DNA of 64,000 nucleotides from Heteronotia binoei (lineage: Eukaryota), in NCBI RefSeq assembly GCF_032191835.1, contig NC_083229.1, positions 111,910,001 through 111,974,000 on the forward strand, given 5' to 3'. Each line of letters opens with the position of its first letter. Positions within the stretch are counted from its first letter, which is position 1. The position numbers were made by a program, and so were the translations under genes. Shown in pieces: positions 6,327 through 64,000 of the stretch. The notes beneath the pieces were generated by a model, which worked only from the letters and a program-made list of their open reading frames with translations, had not been told where the DNA came from and made no database searches.

Positions 6327-6803
6327 AGAGACATCACCCTGCCAACAAAAGTCCGTATAGTCAAAGCGATGGTATTTCCAGTAGTAATGTATGGCTGTGA
6401 AAGCTGGACCATAAGGAAGGCCGAGCGCAGAAGAATAGATGCTTTTGAGATATGGTGCTGGAGAAGACTCTTGAGAGTCCCTTGGACTGCAAGAAGATCA
6501 AATCAGTCAGTCCTAAGGGAAATCACCCAGACTGTTCCCTGGAAGGTCAGATACTGAAGCTGAAGCTCAAATACTTTGGCCACCAAATGAGAAGGGAGCA
6601 CTTACTAGAGAACATCCTGATGCTGGGAAAGACAGAAGGCAAAATTAGAAGGGGACAGCAAAAGATGAGATGGCTGGACAGCGTTACTGATGTAACAAAC
6701 ACAAATTTGAGCAGACTTCAGAGAATGGTGGAAGACAGGAGGGCCTGGCGTGACTTTGTCCATGGGGTTGCAAAAAGTCGGACTCAACTGTGCGACTGAA
6801 AAC
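6327..6803 (+). mobile_element. RTE-BovB LINE 3' fragment
   Basis: Translates to RDITLPTKVRIVKAMVFPVVMYGCESWTIRKAERRRIDAFEIWCWRRLLRVPWTARRSN, the characteristic BovB ORF C-terminus; frameshifted and 5' truncated. Confidence 0.92.
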
Positions 6804-10026: not shown

Positions 10027-10752
10027 CCTCTTGTGGAGGGTGAAAGAGGACAGCGCAAAAGTAGGCTTGAAACTCAACATAAACAAAACTAAGATCATGG
10101 CATCCGGCCCTGTTACACCTTGGCAAATAGAAGGGGAAGATATGGAAGTAGTGATGGACTTCACATATATGGGGTCCAAGATCACTGCATATGGTGACTG
10201 TAGCCATGAAATTAAAAGACATTTGCTCCTTGGGAAGACAGCTATGGCGAACCTGGGCAGTATAATAAAAAGCAGAGACATCACCCTGCCAACAAGAGTC
10301 CGTATAGTCAAAGTGATGGTATTCCCAGTAGTAATGTTTGGCTGTGAGAGCTGGACCATAAGGAAGGCCGAGTGCAGAAGAATAGATGCTTTTGAGCTGT
10401 GGTGCTGGAGAAGAATCTTGAGAGTCCCTTGGACTGCAAGAAAATCAGTCAGTCAGTCTTAAGGGAAATCAACCCAGACTGTTCCCTGGAAAGTCAGATG
10501 CTGAAGCTGAAGTTGAAATACTTTGGCCACCAAATGAGAAGGGAGCACTCCCTGGAGAAGACCCTGATGCTGGGAAAGACAGAAGGCAAAAGAAGAAGGG
10601 GACGGCAAAAGATGAGATGGCTGGACAGCATTACTGATGTAACAAACACGAATTTGAGCAGACTTTGGAGGATGGTGGAAGACAGGAGGGCCTGGTGTGA
10701 CTTTGTCCATTGGGCCGCAAAGAGTCAGACTTGACTGTGCGACTGAACAGCA
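10027..10752 (+). mobile_element. RTE-BovB LINE 3' fragment
   Basis: ORFs 10022-10462 and 10399-10734 give KVGLKLNINKTKIM...YGDCSHEIKRHLLLG...RVPWTARK and LKYFGHQMRREHSLEKTLMLGK. Confidence 0.93.
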
Positions 10753-16938: not shown

Positions 16939-17119
16939 CAGGGGTAGAATTCTAGCAGAAGCTCCTTTGCATATTAAGCCACACACCCCTGACGTAGCCA
17001 ATCCTCCAAGAGCTTACAGGGCTCTTCTTACAGGGCCTACTGTAAGCTCCAGGAGGATTGGCTACATCACAGAAGTGTGGTCAAATATGCAAAGGAGCTC
17101 CTGCTAGAATTCCACCCTG
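16939..17119. mobile_element. Fold-back MITE, family A, nested in a TAGGGTTGCC MITE (16849-17255)
   Basis: TSD gccctcag/ggcctcag; the host element continues on both sides. Confidence 0.8.
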
Positions 17120-40296: not shown

Positions 40297-40478
40297 CAGG
40301 GCTCATTTTGTAGCAGGAGCTCCTTTGCATATTAGGCCACATACCCCTGATGTATTCAATCCTCCAAGAGCTTTGAGTAGGCCGTGTAATAAGAGCCCTG
40401 TAAGCTCTTGGAGGATTGGCTGCATCAGGGGTATGTGGCCTAATATGCAAAGGAGCTCCTGCTACAAAATGAGCCCTG
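40297..40478. mobile_element. Fold-back MITE, family A, in SYCP2L intron 4
   Basis: CAGGGCTCATTTTGTAGC...GCTACAAAATGAGCCCTG; near-perfect palindrome. Confidence 0.82.
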
Positions 40479-52371: not shown

Positions 52372-52541
52372 CAGGCGTGGAATTCTAGCAGGAAGTTCTT
52401 TGCATATCAGGCCACACACCTCTGATGTAGCCAATCCTCCAAGAGCTTGCAAGGCTCTTTTTTGTAAGCTCTTGGAGGACTGGCTACATCAGGGATGTGT
52501 GGCCTAATATGTAAAGGAGCTCCTGCTAGAATTCTACCCTT
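52372..52541. mobile_element. Fold-back MITE, family A
   Basis: TSD ctcaagtg/ctcaaatg. Confidence 0.8.
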
Positions 52542-55766: not shown

Positions 55767-56279
55767 CTCACAGGGTGTTTGTTATGGGGTAGGAAGGTAA
55801 AAGAGATTGTGAGCCGCTCTGAGATTCAGAGCGAAGGATGGGATTTAAATCCAATTTCTTCTTCTACTACTAGTCTTAAAAAGCTGTAACTAGTGGAAAA
55901 GAAAGCATGATTTGTTTGGTAGAAGGTTGGGAAGAAGTATATTTATTAATGCAGCATTCCTCTTTTATTTCATTGAGTTGGAGGTGACTTGGATTGGAGA
56001 AAATCTCAGTTTTCCTGAAACTTCTCCTGCTGCCCCCAGCTGCTTCTCAGTGTCTTGAACCTTGTGGAAGTAGAAGCTGCAGAAAGCCTCCACAGGCTGC
56101 TCTGCAAGGCAGGTGGGCCGGTCAGGCTTTGTTCACTGTGGGAGTCATTAGAGAGCCAATGTGGTATCGTGCTTAGAGTGCTGGACAAGGATCTGTGAGA
56201 CCCAGGTTGGAATCCCCTTTCTGCCCTGGCAGCTGATTGGATGACCCTGGGCCACTCACTTTTGCTGTTGGTAGAAAAT

Positions 56280-56470
56280 GCTGTCAGGTTGCAGCTGACA
56301 TGGCAACGCCTCATGGGGTTTTGAAGGCAAGAGATGAACAAAGGTGGTTTAACACTGCCTGGCTCTAAGCAACCCTGAACTTCCTTGATGGTCTCCCATC
56401 TGAGTACTAACCAGGGCTGACCCCGCTTAGTTCTGAGATCTGACAAGATTGGGCGAGCCTGGGCCTTCTT
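56280..56470 (-). mobile_element. 5S rRNA-derived SINE
   Basis: ggtctcccatctgagtactaaccagggctgaccccgcttag is the reverse complement of the 5S internal promoter region. Confidence 0.68.
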
Positions 56471-57344: not shown

Positions 57345-57626
57345 GGGTAGTCCCCTGTGCAAACACCAGTTGTTTCTGACTCTGGGGTGACGTCGCATCA
57401 CAACATTTTCACGGCAGACTTTTTTACGGGTGGTTTGCCGTTGCCTTCCCCAGTCATCTACACTTTCCCCCCAGCAAGCTGGGTACTCATTTTACCGACC
57501 TTGGAAGGATGGAAGGCTGAGTCAACCTGGAGCTGGCTACCTGAACCCAGCTGGGATCGAACTCAGGTCGTGAGCAGGGAGTTTGGACTGCAGTACTGCA
57601 GCTTACCACTCTGCGCCACGGGGCTC
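57345..57626 (-). mobile_element. Sauria-type SINE
   Basis: Reverse-complement match to 4511-4805. Confidence 0.8.
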
Positions 57627-58165: not shown

Positions 58166-58630
58166 GAGTTCGATCCCAGCAAAAACTGGTTCAGGTAGCC
58201 GGCTCCAGGTTGACTCAGCCTTCTATTCTTCCGAGGTCGGTAAAATGAGTCCCCAGCTTGCTGGGAGGAAAGCGTAGATGACTGGGGAAGGCAATGGCAA
58301 ACCACCCAGTAAAAAAAAAAGTCTGCCGTGAAAACGTTGTGAAAGCAATGTCACCCCAGAGTCGGAAATGACTGGTGCTTGCACAGGGGACTACCTACTA
58401 CCCAACCCCTGGACCGTGGACCAGTCCCAGTGTGTGGCCTATTAGCGACCGGGCTGTGGAGTGAGGCAGAGACCTTCACCTTCTCCTTATTTAAAGACCC
58501 CCATGGGGAACAGGGTGTGGGCGTGGGGGCAGCCTGGGGTAGCAAAAACCCCAGCATCCCCACCGGTCTGTGGAAAAATTGTCTTTCACAGAACTGGTCC
58601 CCGGTGCCAAAAAGGTTGGGGGCCACTGCT
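58166..58630. mobile_element. Sauria-type SINE (58166-58397) followed by a hAT-like MITE remnant ending GGTTGGGGGCCACTG
   Basis: SINE body homologous to 4511-4805; the MITE terminus resembles Charlie-type TIRs. Confidence 0.6.
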
Positions 58631-59376: not shown

Positions 59377-59690
59377 AGAGGCAATCTAGTGGCGCAGAGT
59401 GGTAAAGCAGCAGTACTGCAGTACTGTGATCTGAACTCTGCTCACGACCTGAATGCGATTCCTGCGGAAGCTGGATTTAGGTAGCCGGCCCAAGGTTGAC
59501 TCAGCCTTCCATCCTTCCGAGGTCGGTAAAATGAGTACCCAGCTTGCTGAGGGGAAAGTGTAAAAGGCTGGGGAAGGCAATGGCAAACCACCCCATAAAA
59601 AGTCTGCCATGAAAACGTTGTGAAAGCAACATCACCCCAGAGTTGGAAACGACTGGCGCTTGCACAGGGGACCTTTCTTTTTCCTTTCCT
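59377..59690 (+). mobile_element. Sauria-type SINE
   Basis: Homologous to 4511-4805. Confidence 0.8.
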
Positions 59691-60946: not shown

Positions 60947-61341
60947 GTGAGTGTCTGCTGACTGTGGTCTAATGCAGATAGACCCATGACTAGCACTAAC
61001 CATCCTTGGTTGCCTCGGCTGTGGTTGAGATCCCAGTGAAATGACTCTCCAGCTTGCTAGTCTTGCTAGAGGCTTCTCATTTTTGCAGATAGAGAGTTTT
61101 TGCAATCACAGATGAATGCAGATCACAGTTTCAAACACATTTCAAGCCAGGGTTTCATATTCAGGTTTCAGAGTGGTATTTACGGTAGTCTTTTGCAACC
61201 AAAATGGGAGTCTTGTGGCACTTTAAAAGATCAATGAACTTAAGGCAATTCCTCATATGTGTTGCCGGGCAACATGAGGACTTTGCATCAGATCTTTAAT
61301 GTCTGTCTTGTTCCTCACAGTTTCACATGTGCCTTTGTCTC

Positions 61342-62342
61342 TGTGACGGAAAGCTAGGGGTTAACCAGAAACTGAAGACGTACAGGGCCTGCATCAGGTG
61401 ACCTAAGGGTGGGGGGCAAAGTGCTCGGAGCTCTCACACACACAGCCCTCTTGGCCAAAAGAACCGTTCTTGCACTCGGTCCCTTGTCTTATTGATGCCA
61501 AAGTGAGAGGCCATGGGTGATGCATGGATCTCTTTATTTCAGTCTCTTCGGGGTATTTTACTTGTTTATTTGATGGAAATATAATTCACTTCATAGGGGA
61601 CCACAGCAGCTTTGTTTGTTTTCCCAAAAATATAGGCTCTTGAGAACTTTAACTCCAACCACAGATTTATTATAACACAAAGTCTTTAACTTGGGGACAA
61701 GGGAGATATTTACACAGGCTAACACGTTGCTCAGTTGGTTCAGGCTTTACATTAACTTTTTCCTTCTTTTGAGTTTCTCAGTTACACAGTTCACAGTTTC
61801 CCTATAACTTGCTCTCTCCACTTCTAGCAAAGGTCTGGCCTCTTGGGAATGATGTGCCAAGTCTCACCCCACGACTGGAGTCCCTCTCTCAGCCCTTCTG
61901 GTGTCTCAGACCTACATCCACTCCCTCAACCACCTCACTAGATCCTCAGAGTTGTTGATAGGTGTCTGTGACCGTTCAGGTCTTGACTGACTCACACTTG
62001 TTCCACACACACAGCCCTCTTGGCTGGTTTTGTCGAGCTTGCAGTCTCTGGAAGACTTTCCCGTCACTGTCTCAAGCTCCTTCACAGGATCAGCTGCCCT
62101 CCCAGCCTCGGTCAGGCACGAACTGACCCACTCAGTCTCTGTCAGGCCACAACACTGACAGACTTCTGACAGGCACCAACTCTGTCAGACACTAACTGAC
62201 TGAATGACTGCCTCAGCAGATTCTGTCACTCAACCACTTTCCATCCCTGAGAGCTCCGAGCACTTTGCCCCCCACCCTCAGGTCACCTGACGCAGGCCCT
62301 GTGCGTCTTCAGTTTCTGGTTAACCCCTAGCTTTCCGTCACA
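61342..62342. mobile_element. 1001-bp TG...CA element with 95-bp TIRs, a 5-bp TSD (GTCTC) and a Gypsy/Ginger-like integrase fragment
   Basis: 61342-61436 is the reverse complement of 62248-62342 with 3 mismatches. GTCTC lies at 61337-61341 and 62343-62347. The minus strand of about 61452-61535 encodes KEIHASPMASHFGINKTRDRVQERFFWP. Confidence 0.8.
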
Positions 62343-63520
62343 GTCTCCTTGCTAGAAGCACCCCCATCACCAGTTTTCACTTTCCCACACTGCCCCATGA
62401 AGGCACTGTTGGTTCCATTGCAAAACTTACATGCAACCCTGTAAGTTACATGATTTCAAGGTGAACTATATTTATATGAAGTTGAGGGGAATGAAACTTT
62501 CATTGTAGGTTCTTCATGTCTAGGACTGGAAACAGGTGGCATTCCATGGACATGCTTTGGCAGCGTCTGGTTACCCATGGTAACAGGGAAATGAAATAAG
62601 GGGTAAAATGAGATGGGGAGGGGTGTTGTGAAATGTCACAGCTCATTTGTGCTAAGAGACTTTTCACGTATGTGAGATCTCGGACTGTTGTAGCGTCTTC
62701 GACAGAAATAGTTTGTTGTGCCAGAAAAGAGTCAACGGTCCGTACCTCCCAGAAGGTGCTCTTCTAAGTAAAGGTGGAATTGATGACAAATCTGACTCTT
62801 CACTGTGCTCTAAGTGAATGTGTATAAGTGGGGCAGGGTCAGAAGCCTTGTGTTGCTTTCCTTATGACCTACATTTGATCTAGCATAAAGGCATTCAAAC
62901 CATTTCCGTGCTTATGAAGCCCTTCATGACATCTGTATGGTATAAAGGATTCTGAGGTATGCTTTCGTTTTGCACGTTACTGGCCAGGCCTGTTGTACTG
63001 CCTCAATTTCCTGAGTAAACTGAGCTCTGAAGCACTCTTCAGACCTTCCTTCAGATTAAACAAAGTAATCTGAGTATAGCCCTAAATACATCTGGTGGTA
63101 GCATCAGCTATTCTGCATTTATATATATATTTATTTAATTTATATGCCACCTTTTCCCAAAACGGGCTCAGGGTGGATGGCAACATAGATAAAACAGCAA
63201 TTAAAACTTGAAATTATATAATTCCTAAGAATTCATTGTACAACCAAATGCTATACTTCTAATGATGACTAACCGAATATCATACTTTACCTTGGTTTAG
63301 AAATGGCAAATTGAAGCTGTATACTTACCTACTTAACTTTCGCAAAAGTATTTTTTTGTTCTTTCTGAATTTTATTAGGTGTTCCAAAGGATAATAGTTT
63401 TTTAAAAGCCTTACAATTAAAAATCAAAAACTATATAAGGCAGTACAATAAAACAATAGGCAAGTTTTAGACCATAGATGTGGTTTCAATTGGGTACCTT
63501 CTACAATTCAGTGTAATGTA

Positions 63521-64000
63521 AAAGGTAAAGGTAGTCCCCTGTGCAAGCACCAGTTGTTTCCGACTCTGGGGTGACGTTGCTTTCACAACGTTTTCCATTT
63601 TGAAAATTTTATTTGTTTTCTAGAAAGTTAAAGGGAATGGGTAAAGGGGAATAGAAAATCGAAGTTACAGATATCAGTACTATAATCTAATCTGCATGTA
63701 GTATACTTAAGATACAAATGTTATCACGTTATTATCTCTTTACATTAAATCATCAACATCTAAATAGCATGTTTTAGTGATTGTAAGTCTTCTTGTTAAA
63801 ATGTCTATTTAAGCTTACATTTCCAATATAAATGATATTATAATATAGAATACAGGAGAAAGAGAAATTCACACCAAAGAGTCTTGAGCTTGCTTTCACG
63901 TTTTCACGGCAGACTTTTTATGGGGTGGTTTGCCATTGCCTTCCCCAGTCATCTACACTTCTCCCCCAGCAAGCTGGGTACTCATTTTACCAACCTTGGA
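63521..64000 (-). mobile_element. Sauria-type SINE pieces (63521-63595 and 63890-64000)
   Basis: Reverse-complement match to the SINE tail and body; may be one element split by an insertion. Confidence 0.65.

What the first reader, a model, noticed from the sequence alone, without database searches (positions are those of the whole stretch)
61342..62342. LTR-like element with inverted ends: TG...CA, 95-bp TIRs, 5-bp TSD and an integrase zinc-finger remnant
Seen: a 1001-bp unit with TIRs differing at 3 of 95 positions and a GTCTC direct repeat on both flanks. The minus strand encodes KEIHASPMASHFGINKTRDRVQERFFWP, resembling the H-x-H-x-G-x-x-KT...RF-x-WP half of the Gypsy-type integrase H2C2 domain. 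A 21-nt segment (CACACACACAGCCCTCTTGGC) occurs at both 61435 and 62004, at the junction of the left TIR and the integrase piece. The interior has minus-strand AATAAA motifs. Established: LTR retroelements have direct repeats, while Ginger DNA transposons have TG...CA TIRs, 4-5-bp TSDs and Gypsy-like integrases. Inference: either a non-autonomous Ginger-like element, or a template-switch product of a Gypsy element with two copies of one LTR end that integrase still inserted cleanly. The second case would be a snapshot of a retroelement becoming TIR-bounded.
Basis: partly seen in the sequence, partly recalled or inferred. Interest (0 to 1): 0.75.

Follow-up and report, generated by a model that had tools for sequence, protein, structure and literature searches.

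The report
Mis-made retrotransposon copy with inverted ends
A 1-kb insertion in an intron of a gecko's SYCP2L gene is most likely a faulty DNA copy of a Gypsy-type retrotransposon whose far end was replaced by an upside-down copy of its own first 95 bases. The element's integrase still pasted it in cleanly, so it is a real and tidy curiosity, probably dead on arrival rather than a new kind of jumping gene.

Summary
The unit is 1001 bp (61342-62342). It has 95-bp inverted arms that differ by 3 transitions, TGTGA...TCACA ends and an exact 5-bp GTCTC duplication. A minus-strand Integrase_H2C2 fragment scores Pfam E 2.5e-9, and a 21-nt segment occurs twice.

The pol-derived piece is longer than noted: 71 codons with 2 stops, at 61455-61667. 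It breaks at the conserved Trp-Pro codons. The junction 21-mer reads as about 4 nt of microhomology, about 15 nt of filler copied from the interior, and a 2-nt overlap with the arm.

My best reading (0.58) is an aberrant Ty3/Gypsy cDNA with two copies of one LTR end. It would have been made by serial template switches, inserted once by integrase, and unable to move again.

A Ginger-type DNA transposon is less likely. Animal Ginger elements make 4-bp duplications at other target sequences, and the closest integrases belong to polyproteins that carry reverse transcriptase.

The scan noted the same kind of insertion before, at six or more other places in this genome. I have not checked those notes. 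If they hold, this is a recurrent by-product rather than a one-off.

The parts
61337..61341 (.). Left copy of the 5-bp target-site duplication, GTCTC
   Evidence: Read directly. It is identical to 62343-62347, and the neighbouring bases differ, so the length is exactly 5.
61342..61436 (+). Left arm. In the sense orientation of the pol fragment this is the 3'-terminal inverted copy of the first 95 nt of the element. It starts TGTGACGG.
   Evidence: Inverted repeat, 92 of 95 matched to 62248-62342.
61435..61455 (+). Junction copy of the 21-nt segment. It joins the pol fragment to the left arm. On the sense strand its first 4 nt (GCCA) coincide with the conserved Trp-Pro codons of the integrase. 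Its last 2 nt overlap the arm.
   Evidence: 100% identical to 62004-62024. Homologues all keep W-P at this place.
61455..61667 (-). Pol-derived fragment. It covers the linker upstream of the integrase zinc finger plus the first half (HH) of the H2C2 finger. It spans 71 codons with two in-frame stops and ends at Trp-Pro. The CxxC half and the DDE core are absent.
   Evidence: tblastn against P0001 residues 629-689, E 8.6e-6 against the whole window and 7e-9 against the element alone. Pfam PF17921 on the stop-free piece 61437-61538, E 2.5e-9.
61668..62247 (-). Non-coding interior of unknown parentage, presumed to be LTR body plus leader. It contains a 27-nt x2 tandem subrepeat and a TGACAG-rich palindromic stretch at 62108-62228. 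A possible native LTR end, ACGGTCACA, lies at 61975-61967.
   Evidence: No Pfam family on any open stretch. No homologue of the 90-aa open frame 61915-62184. Tandem repeats, self-comparison. The LTR end is an inference from the 6-nt GTCACA match to the terminus.
62004..62024 (+). Interior copy of the 21-nt segment. It is the presumed source of the junction filler and lies 223 nt inside the right arm.
62248..62342 (-). Right arm. In pol-sense orientation this is the native 5' start of the element (presumed LTR/U3 start), and it continues into the interior.
62343..62347 (.). Right copy of the 5-bp target-site duplication, GTCTC

Best explanation
This is a single, dead-on-arrival insertion of an aberrant reverse-transcription product of a Ty3/Gypsy-type LTR retrotransposon.

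**Layout, read on the window's minus strand (the sense strand of the pol fragment):**
1. The start of an LTR, TGTGACGG....
2. About 580 nt of LTR or leader-like non-coding sequence.
3. 213 nt of pol, ending in the middle of the integrase zinc finger.

**What happened at the break (inferred).** The growing DNA strand left its template at the Trp-Pro codons. It landed on a 4-nt match (GCCA) about 320 nt into the element and copied about 17 nt there. It then switched, on a 2-nt match, to a strand of the same polarity. It copied that strand's first 95 nt backwards to its very 5' end. That template was either the strand's own 5' end or a free plus-strand strong-stop DNA, which begins exactly at the LTR start.

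**Result.** After second-strand synthesis the product was a linear DNA with the same LTR terminus at both ends in inverted orientation. Each end offered the ...CA-3' that integrase needs, so integrase inserted it in one event and made the 5-bp GTCTC duplication.

**Shown:** the arms, the termini, the duplication, the pol fragment and its break point, and the copied 21-mer.

**Inferred:** that the arms are the U3 end of an LTR, the template switches, the role of integrase, and that the element cannot move again.
For: - **One insertion event.** The arms are 92/95 identical and end at the same internal position. An exact 5-bp duplication flanks the whole unit.
- **Integrase signature.** The termini follow the TGTNR pattern of Gypsy LTRs (PMC2836005). 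A 5-bp duplication is the commonest length for LTR elements (PMC6839031).
- **Gypsy parentage of the pol piece.** Integrase_H2C2 scores E 2.5e-9, and homology runs over 71 codons to P0001. The best full-length relatives, at 57-59% identity, are polyproteins with RVT_1, RNase H and rve domains, named RNA-directed DNA polymerase by their sources. The one Ginger1/GIN1-like hit (P0002, which has a Ulp1 domain) is 43-44% identical.
- **Template-switch junction.** The 21-mer is an exact copy of an interior segment. It begins in the conserved W-P codons and overlaps the arm by 2 nt. Deletions with short templated insertions are the classic mark of serial template switching. LTR-element insertions made complex by template switching, and still flanked by duplications, are documented (PMC1950507).
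- **No means of moving.** There is no reverse transcriptase, no DDE core and no transposase ORF.
- **Lead only, untested here.** Earlier notes of this scan list other TG...CA insertions with 5-bp duplications and inverted LTR-like ends in the same genome. One is a nearly intact Gmr1-type Gypsy with an inverted 130-bp U3 copy.
Against: - I could not find the parent element or any second copy. There is none in the window.
- That the arms are an LTR end therefore rests on the terminal motif, the duplication length and the linked pol fragment. It does not rest on an observed pair of direct LTRs.
- No primer-binding site, polypurine tract or certain LTR boundary could be identified.
- Filler DNA at deletion junctions also arises by abortive gap repair of cut-and-paste transposons.
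- A 5-bp duplication also occurs in the Ginger2 members TDD-4 and TDD-5.
- Only about 300 nt lie between the presumed LTR and the integrase piece. So either more jumps occurred, or the template was already a deleted, non-coding relative. The two stops in 71 codons point the same way.
Confidence: 0.58

Rival explanations
1. A non-autonomous member of a cut-and-paste DNA transposon family of the Ginger kind (Gypsy-integrase-related transposase, TG...CA TIRs). On this reading the integrase piece is a remnant of the family's own transposase gene, left by an internal deletion with filler DNA.
For: A 95-bp TIR lies within the Ginger ranges (40-270 bp for Ginger1, 50-180 bp for Ginger2). The termini are TGTNR. 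Ginger transposases carry the H2C2 finger. TDD-4 and TDD-5 make 5-bp duplications. Filler at a deletion junction fits abortive gap repair. Several small TG...CA elements with inverted arms and 5-bp duplications are noted elsewhere in this genome (untested).
Against: Animal Ginger1 makes 4-bp CCGG/CCGT duplications. Animal Ginger2 makes 4-bp duplications at AT-rich RTATAY targets, and GingerRoot makes 6-bp ones. Here the duplication is 5 bp and reads GTCTC. The fragment is closer to RT-bearing Gypsy polyproteins (57-61% identity) than to the Ginger1/GIN1-like hit (43-44%), though over only 28-71 residues. The other noted cases differ widely in size (453-5668 bp) and arm length (95 to about 335 bp), and one is said to be a nearly whole Gypsy with RT. 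That fits independent accidents better than one TIR family. In the two papers consulted, I saw no active Ginger family reported from reptiles: the Ginger paper's only lizard mention is the domesticated Gin-1 gene, and the GingerRoot paper mentions no reptile or lizard.
Confidence: 0.18
2. An ordinary solo LTR, or a whole LTR, of a family whose LTR happens to carry long terminal inverted repeats and a captured pol piece. On this reading the inverted structure arose once in an ancestor and was then copied normally as part of each LTR.
For: TG...CA ends, a length of about 1 kb and a 5-bp duplication are just what a solo LTR shows. The interior has U3-like short tandem subrepeats.
Against: LTR terminal inverted repeats are normally a few bases long, not 95. 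An integrase zinc-finger fragment inside an LTR would need a separate capture. The exact 21-nt filler sits right at the pol/arm joint and ties the pol break to the inversion as one event. No second copy was available to test this.
Confidence: 0.08
3. Rearrangement after insertion, or two independent insertions. For example, two LTR fragments landed head to head, or a full element was later inverted and deleted in place.
For: Complex LTR structures often arise by recombination after insertion (PMC1950507).
Against: Recombination between separate insertions does not leave matching duplications. Here the flanks match 5/5, against about 0.13% expected by chance. Both arms stop at the same internal base. 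An in-place inversion would need a breakpoint exactly at the boundary between element and host.
Confidence: 0.03

Closest known systems
Complex LTR-retrotransposon insertions made by abnormal template switching during reverse transcription (Sabot and Schulman 2007, PMC1950507)
   Same: It is a single integration event with a flanking 5-bp duplication and near-identical outer terminal repeats. The structure was fixed before insertion, and integrase still accepted the ends.
   Different: The described cases have three direct LTRs and two internal regions. Here the second terminal repeat is a 95-nt inverted partial copy, most of the element is missing, and a short filler sits at the joint.
Ginger1 and Ginger2/TDD DNA transposons (Bao, Kapitonov and Jurka 2010, PMC2836005)
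   Same: TGTNR termini, TIRs of tens to hundreds of bp, and a link to a Gypsy-like integrase with an H2C2 finger. TDD-4 and TDD-5 also make 5-bp duplications.
   Different: Animal Ginger elements make 4-bp duplications at specific targets (CCGG/CCGT, or AT-rich RTATAY). This copy has no transposase gene, and its integrase piece is nearer to RT-linked integrases. No family membership could be shown.
Twin-priming 5' inversions of L1 (LINE) insertions
   Same: It works alike in outline. A copying accident flips part of a retroelement inside one pair of target duplications and yields a dead copy. If the scan's other notes hold, it also recurs many times in one genome.
   Different: The machinery differs: target-primed reverse transcription for L1, against cDNA made in a particle and inserted by integrase here. 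Only the terminal 95 nt is duplicated in inverted form, rather than a segment being flipped.
Earlier finding of this scan, s1-318575 (same genome): a Gmr1-type Gypsy copy with two U3 ends
   Same: The geometry as described is the same: an inverted copy of the first ~130 bp of the 5' LTR replaces the 3' LTR, with a clean 5-bp duplication.
   Different: That copy is said to be nearly full length (5.7 kb). This one keeps only a 213-nt pol piece and has a filler at the joint. I could not see its sequence, so I do not know whether the two belong to one family.

Membership tests
Ty3/Gypsy LTR retrotransposon (canonical insertion) | Two LTRs in direct orientation | tested here: not met
   The only long repeat is inverted, 95 nt. 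The only direct repeat is the 21-mer.
Ty3/Gypsy LTR retrotransposon (canonical insertion) | TG...CA (TGTNR) termini and a 4-6 bp, mostly 5-bp, target duplication | tested here: met
   TGTGA...TCACA with GTCTC on both sides. Pattern as given in PMC2836005 and PMC6839031.
Ty3/Gypsy LTR retrotransposon (canonical insertion) | Pol with reverse transcriptase, RNase H and integrase | tested here: not met
   Only a 71-codon piece at the N-terminal end of the integrase is present. No other open stretch matches Pfam.
Ty3/Gypsy LTR retrotransposon (canonical insertion) | Primer-binding site after the 5' LTR and polypurine tract before the 3' LTR | tested here: inconclusive
   By eye, no tRNA-like TGG... 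site follows the candidate LTR end at 61967. No tRNA gene in the window was available for comparison. No 3' LTR exists, so a polypurine tract is not expected.
Ginger1 DNA transposon | 4-bp target duplication, CCGG or CCGT | tested here: not met
   The duplication is 5 bp, GTCTC (definition).
Ginger1 DNA transposon | TIRs of 40-270 bp with TGTNR ends | tested here: met
   95-bp arms starting TGTGA.
Ginger1 DNA transposon | Family transposase: Gypsy-like integrase fused to an OTU or Ulp1 protease, without RT | not testable with these tools
   This copy holds only a fragment, and no access to the rest of the genome was possible. The fragment is 43-44% identical to the one Ulp1-bearing hit, against 57-61% to the best hits; the full-length ones among these (57-59%) are RT-bearing polyproteins.
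Ginger2/TDD DNA transposon | 4-bp duplication at AT-rich RTATAY targets in animals; 5 bp in TDD-4 and TDD-5 of Dictyostelium | tested here: inconclusive
   The 5-bp length matches only the Dictyostelium members. The target GTCTC is not the AT-rich animal motif.
Ginger2/TDD DNA transposon | Multiple copies sharing the TIRs with different target duplications | not testable with these tools
   No second copy in the window. No run was listed and the pattern scans were blank.
GingerRoot DNA transposon | 6-bp duplication, mostly TA...TA termini | tested here: not met
   5-bp duplication and TG...CA ends.
DIRS-type retroelement (inverted terminal repeats) | Tyrosine recombinase, no target duplication | tested here: not met
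   A clean 5-bp duplication is present, and the linked enzyme fragment is a DDE-type integrase zinc finger. The definition is from general knowledge.
Template-switch complex LTR insertion (Sabot and Schulman type) | Flanking duplication plus highly similar outer terminal repeats, showing one reverse-transcription and integration event | tested here: met
   Arms 96.8% identical and duplication 5/5. Criteria in PMC1950507.
Template-switch complex LTR insertion (Sabot and Schulman type) | Three direct LTRs with two internal regions | tested here: not met
   The arms are inverted and there is a single interior.

The most novel reading that the evidence does not exclude
The element is not an isolated accident. 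It would be one of a recurrent class in this gecko, in one of two forms:
- A regular by-product of Gypsy reverse transcription, in which a nascent strand copies a strong-stop DNA of its own polarity to its 5' end. This gives U3-U3 or U5-U5 inverted-end cDNAs that integrase inserts, an LTR-element counterpart of L1 twin priming.
- More radically, LTR-derived, TIR-bounded units that are still moved by a Gypsy-type integrase. That would be a living intermediate between LTR retrotransposons and Ginger-like DNA transposons.

The probability given is for the radical form, a mobile TIR family. I put the milder form, a recurrent dead by-product, at about 0.4.
Probability: 0.13. Interest if true: 0.8.

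Novelty: new variant of a known kind. Interest (0 to 1): 0.45.

Why it matters
If the reading holds, the locus is a clean fossil showing two things. A retrotransposon integrase will insert any linear DNA that carries its terminal sequence at both ends, whatever the orientation. And reverse transcription can produce such DNA by copying a strand of its own polarity. That is the very step needed to turn an LTR element into a TIR-bounded one, or the reverse, which bears on the debated link between Ginger transposons and Gypsy elements. This copy alone is dead and changes little. The value would come from a genome-wide count. The scan's other notes hint at a whole class in this gecko, which would give rules (arm length against LTR length, U3-U3 against U5-U5) to test the mechanism. 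As a side effect, the 95-bp arms put a long double-stranded stem into the SYCP2L pre-mRNA.

Tried and rejected
**Searches for other copies**
- blastn of the element against the window found only itself, its arms and the 21-mer.
- The look-up of sequencing runs listed no run, so read laying could not be used and copy number was not measured.
- Exact-pattern scans of viral, metagenome and prokaryote genome contigs with the first 25 nt of the arm were blank, as expected for a gecko repeat.
- Word searches with the 90-aa open frame and with the arm-spanning 40-aa frame found no candidate. A blank here says nothing.

**Search for the parent**
- The whole-library phmmer search of the 34-aa stop-free integrase piece gave only distant relatives, at most 61% identity, from a pseudoscorpion, fish and unnamed contigs. 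The family was not pinned down, and a Gmr1-type origin was neither shown nor excluded.

**Ideas examined and dropped**
- A paralogous empty site: the flanks are unique in the window.
- A second integrase piece at 56152-56329 that seemed to carry on the zinc finger. The match is weak (E 0.055) and the frame is full of stops, so I take it for chance.
- The arm start translating to a GxLGVN-like motif. E 0.11 under permissive settings, taken for chance.
- An internal near-copy of flank plus terminus (GAGACAGTGACGG at 62073-62058). E 1.2, taken for chance.
- Single-ended autointegration as the mechanism. Rejected because the joint next to the arm does not carry an element terminus ending in CA (concept).
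- Transib, hAT5 and other superfamilies with 5-bp duplications. Rejected on terminal motifs, from general knowledge.

**Other**
- Rfam gave nothing above chance.
- Literature searches found no description of LTR-element insertions with inverted duplicated ends. The library is not exhaustive.

Full report
**Observation.** The window holds no N. At 61342-62342 lies a 1001-bp unit.
- Its first and last 95 nt are reverse complements of each other, apart from three transitions at arm positions 40, 52 and 64.
- The unit begins TGTGACGG and ends CCGTCACA.
- GTCTC stands directly outside both ends. The next bases outward differ, so the duplication is exactly 5 bp. Two random 5-mers of this window match at 0.13%.
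- The element's only within-window matches in a blastn at E ≤ 1 are its own arms and a 21-nt direct repeat at 61435-61455 and 62004-62024.
- Among 55 inverted pairs in the window, this is the most similar of the long ones. The others look like scattered copies of interspersed repeats.

**The coding remnant.** On the minus strand, 61437-61538 translates without a stop. It matches Pfam Integrase_H2C2 above the curated cut-off: E 2.5e-9, 37.5 bits, profile positions 11-38 of 59. The His-His half of the finger is present, and the Cys-Cys half and the catalytic core are missing.

A whole-library search gave 22 relatives.
- The best full-length hits (P0001, P0010, P0007/P0018) are 57-59% identical. 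P0001 carries RVT_1, RNase H and rve. P0001 and P0010 are named RNA-directed DNA polymerase by their sources, and P0007 carries the same K02A2.6-like label.
- One hit with a Ulp1 protease domain (P0002, a Ginger1/GIN1-type protein of a carp) is only 43-44% identical.

tblastn with P0001 extends the homology upstream to 61667: 71 codons with two in-frame stops, matching P0001 residues 629-689. I left the stops as they are and searched only the stop-free piece.

The three minus-strand AATAAA motifs lie in or at the edge of this stretch, mostly as Asn-Lys codons. They are not poly(A) signals.

The rest of the interior (61668-62247) has no Pfam match on any open stretch, including a 90-aa open frame that also has no homologue. 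It has no Rfam family above chance. It does have a 27-nt x2 subrepeat and a TGACAG-rich palindromic patch, which would suit an LTR body.

**The joint.** On the sense (minus) strand, the pol fragment ends ...TTT TGG CCA, that is Phe-Trp-Pro.
- Nearly all homologues have Trp-Pro here and then continue with the Cys-Cys half of the finger.
- The 21-mer starts at the last G of the Trp codon and ends two bases inside the arm.
- So about 4 nt (GCCA) are shared between pol and the interior copy at 62024-62004. About 15 nt are pure filler copied from that interior site in the same orientation. The final TG is shared with the inner end of the inverted arm.

Two successive joints, each with 2-4 nt of microhomology and a short templated insertion between them, are the usual trace of a polymerase hopping between templates.

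**Mechanism proposed.** With the pol strand taken as sense, the unit reads:
1. LTR start, of which the first 95 nt forms the arm.
2. LTR body and leader.
3. Pol piece.
4. Filler.
5. Inverted copy of nt 95 to 1.

One change of polarity explains the structure. A nascent plus-sense strand, or its mirror image on the other strand, ended by copying the 5'-terminal 95 nt of a plus-sense DNA to the last base.

Plus-strand strong-stop DNA is the natural candidate template, because its 5' end is exactly the LTR start. This rests on general knowledge of retroviral reverse transcription, as outlined in PMC6894440.

The product has the same terminus at both ends, each with ...CA-3', so integrase could join both ends and create the 5-bp duplication.

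The alternative assignment, two U5 ends, would need more polarity changes to accommodate the pol strand, so I rank it lower. I cannot prove the assignment, because I found no certain LTR end, primer-binding site or polypurine tract. A candidate LTR end, ACGGTCACA at 61975-61967, would give an LTR of 376 nt with the 21-mer source inside it.

Only about 300 nt separate that point from the pol piece, and the pol piece has two stops. The template was therefore probably an already deleted, non-coding relative, or further jumps occurred.

**Why not Ginger.** The Ginger paper (PMC2836005) gives the following:
- Ginger1: TIRs of 40-270 bp, TGTNR ends, 4-bp CCGG/CCGT duplications.
- Animal Ginger2: TIRs of 50-180 bp, 4-bp duplications at AT-rich RTATAY sites.
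- TDD-4 and TDD-5 of Dictyostelium: 5-bp duplications, the only Ginger members with that length.

GingerRoot makes 6-bp duplications (PMC6839031), and that paper notes that most LTR elements make 5-bp ones.

The TIR length and ends fit Ginger, but the duplication does not fit the animal groups. No transposase is present, and the fragment leans towards RT-linked integrases. With one copy and 28-71 residues this is a lean, not proof, so I leave 0.18 on a TIR-transposon family.

**Other rivals.**
- A solo LTR of a family whose LTR carries long inverted ends (0.08) is the most ordinary alternative. It needs an odd LTR and a separate capture of pol, and it does not explain why the filler sits exactly at the pol/arm joint.
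- Rearrangement after insertion, or two separate insertions (0.03), is hard to square with the matching duplication and with arms that end at the same base. Recombinant complexes lack matching duplications (PMC1950507).
- Single-ended autointegration (concept from PMC7197481) predicts an element terminus at the inner joint. That is not seen.

**Context.** Earlier notes place the window in the SYCP2L gene of a gecko. The exons rise along the plus strand, so the element sits in an intron, antisense to the gene. In the pre-mRNA the arms would form a near-perfect 95-bp stem. The arms differ by K2P 0.033, which is very roughly 7-20 My at assumed squamate rates of 0.8-2.5e-9 per site per year (the rates are from my own knowledge).

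**The scan has seen this kind before.** Notes on other DNA of the same genome describe:
- a nearly whole Gmr1-type Gypsy with an inverted 130-bp U3 copy in place of its 3' LTR (s1-318575, followed up as a one-off);
- a 625-bp TGT...ACA unit with 126-bp arms (s1-340854);
- a 1151-bp unit with ~335-bp arms (s1-322573);
- a 1409-letter unit with two inverted LTR-like ends (s1-321181);
- an LTR+PBS fragment closed by an inverted copy of its own U3 end (s1-340800);
- an element with two U5 ends (s1-345608).

All are said to have 5-bp duplications. I could not see their sequences, so they are leads, not evidence. If they hold, about seven cases in 756 windows argue for a recurrent copying accident rather than a unique fossil. 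Their varied sizes and arm lengths fit independent events better than one TIR family. The LTR+PBS case is what a self-templated plus-strand strong-stop DNA would look like.

**Limits.** The collections open to DNA search hold no gecko genome. Copy number, the parent element and the empty site therefore remain untested.

**Verdict.** "Becoming TIR-bounded" is overstated for what looks like a dead copy. In the library I searched I found only direct-repeat complex insertions described, never inverted-end ones. I rate it a new variant of a known kind (aberrant LTR-element cDNA insertions), of moderate interest alone and of more interest as one of a possible class.

Noticed in passing
window 61337-62347: As part of the SYCP2L pre-mRNA (intron, element antisense to the gene), the two arms pair into a near-perfect 95-bp stem in the predicted minimum-energy fold. 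Such a stem is a possible substrate for double-stranded-RNA editing or processing.
   Followed up: partly
window 62073-62058 and 61975-61962: Two short interior sites resemble 'flank plus terminus'. GAGACAGTGACGG resembles the 5' flank plus element start, and CGGTCACAGACAC resembles the element end plus 3' flank. They bracket about 100 nt that contain the interior 21-mer. The E-values are at chance level. The second site is my candidate for the native LTR end.
   Followed up: partly
window 62339-62298 (minus strand): The first codons of the arm translate to a G-x-L-G-V-N-x-K-L string that resembles the GHxGxxKT core of the same zinc-finger domain (E 0.11 under permissive settings). I take it for chance, but it is odd given the linked fragment.
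   Followed up: no
window 6333-6485 and 10280-10381: Two similar stretches on the minus strand give the same weak match to an integrase hit (...YYW..H.FDYTD.CWQGD). They are probably two copies of an interspersed repeat, not an integrase.
   Followed up: no
window 57398-57552, 58188-58315, 59469-59623, 63898-64000: About 100-155-nt segments, 90-91% alike, occur in both orientations around the exon-15 region. They are probably copies of a SINE or MITE family, and several lie close enough to pair in the pre-mRNA.
   Followed up: no
window 40297-40478, 1484-1653, 52377-52537, 16942-17117: Four compact palindromes: 75-78-nt arms, 85-96% complementary, with 9-28 nt loops. They look like foldback or MITE-type repeats.
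   Followed up: no
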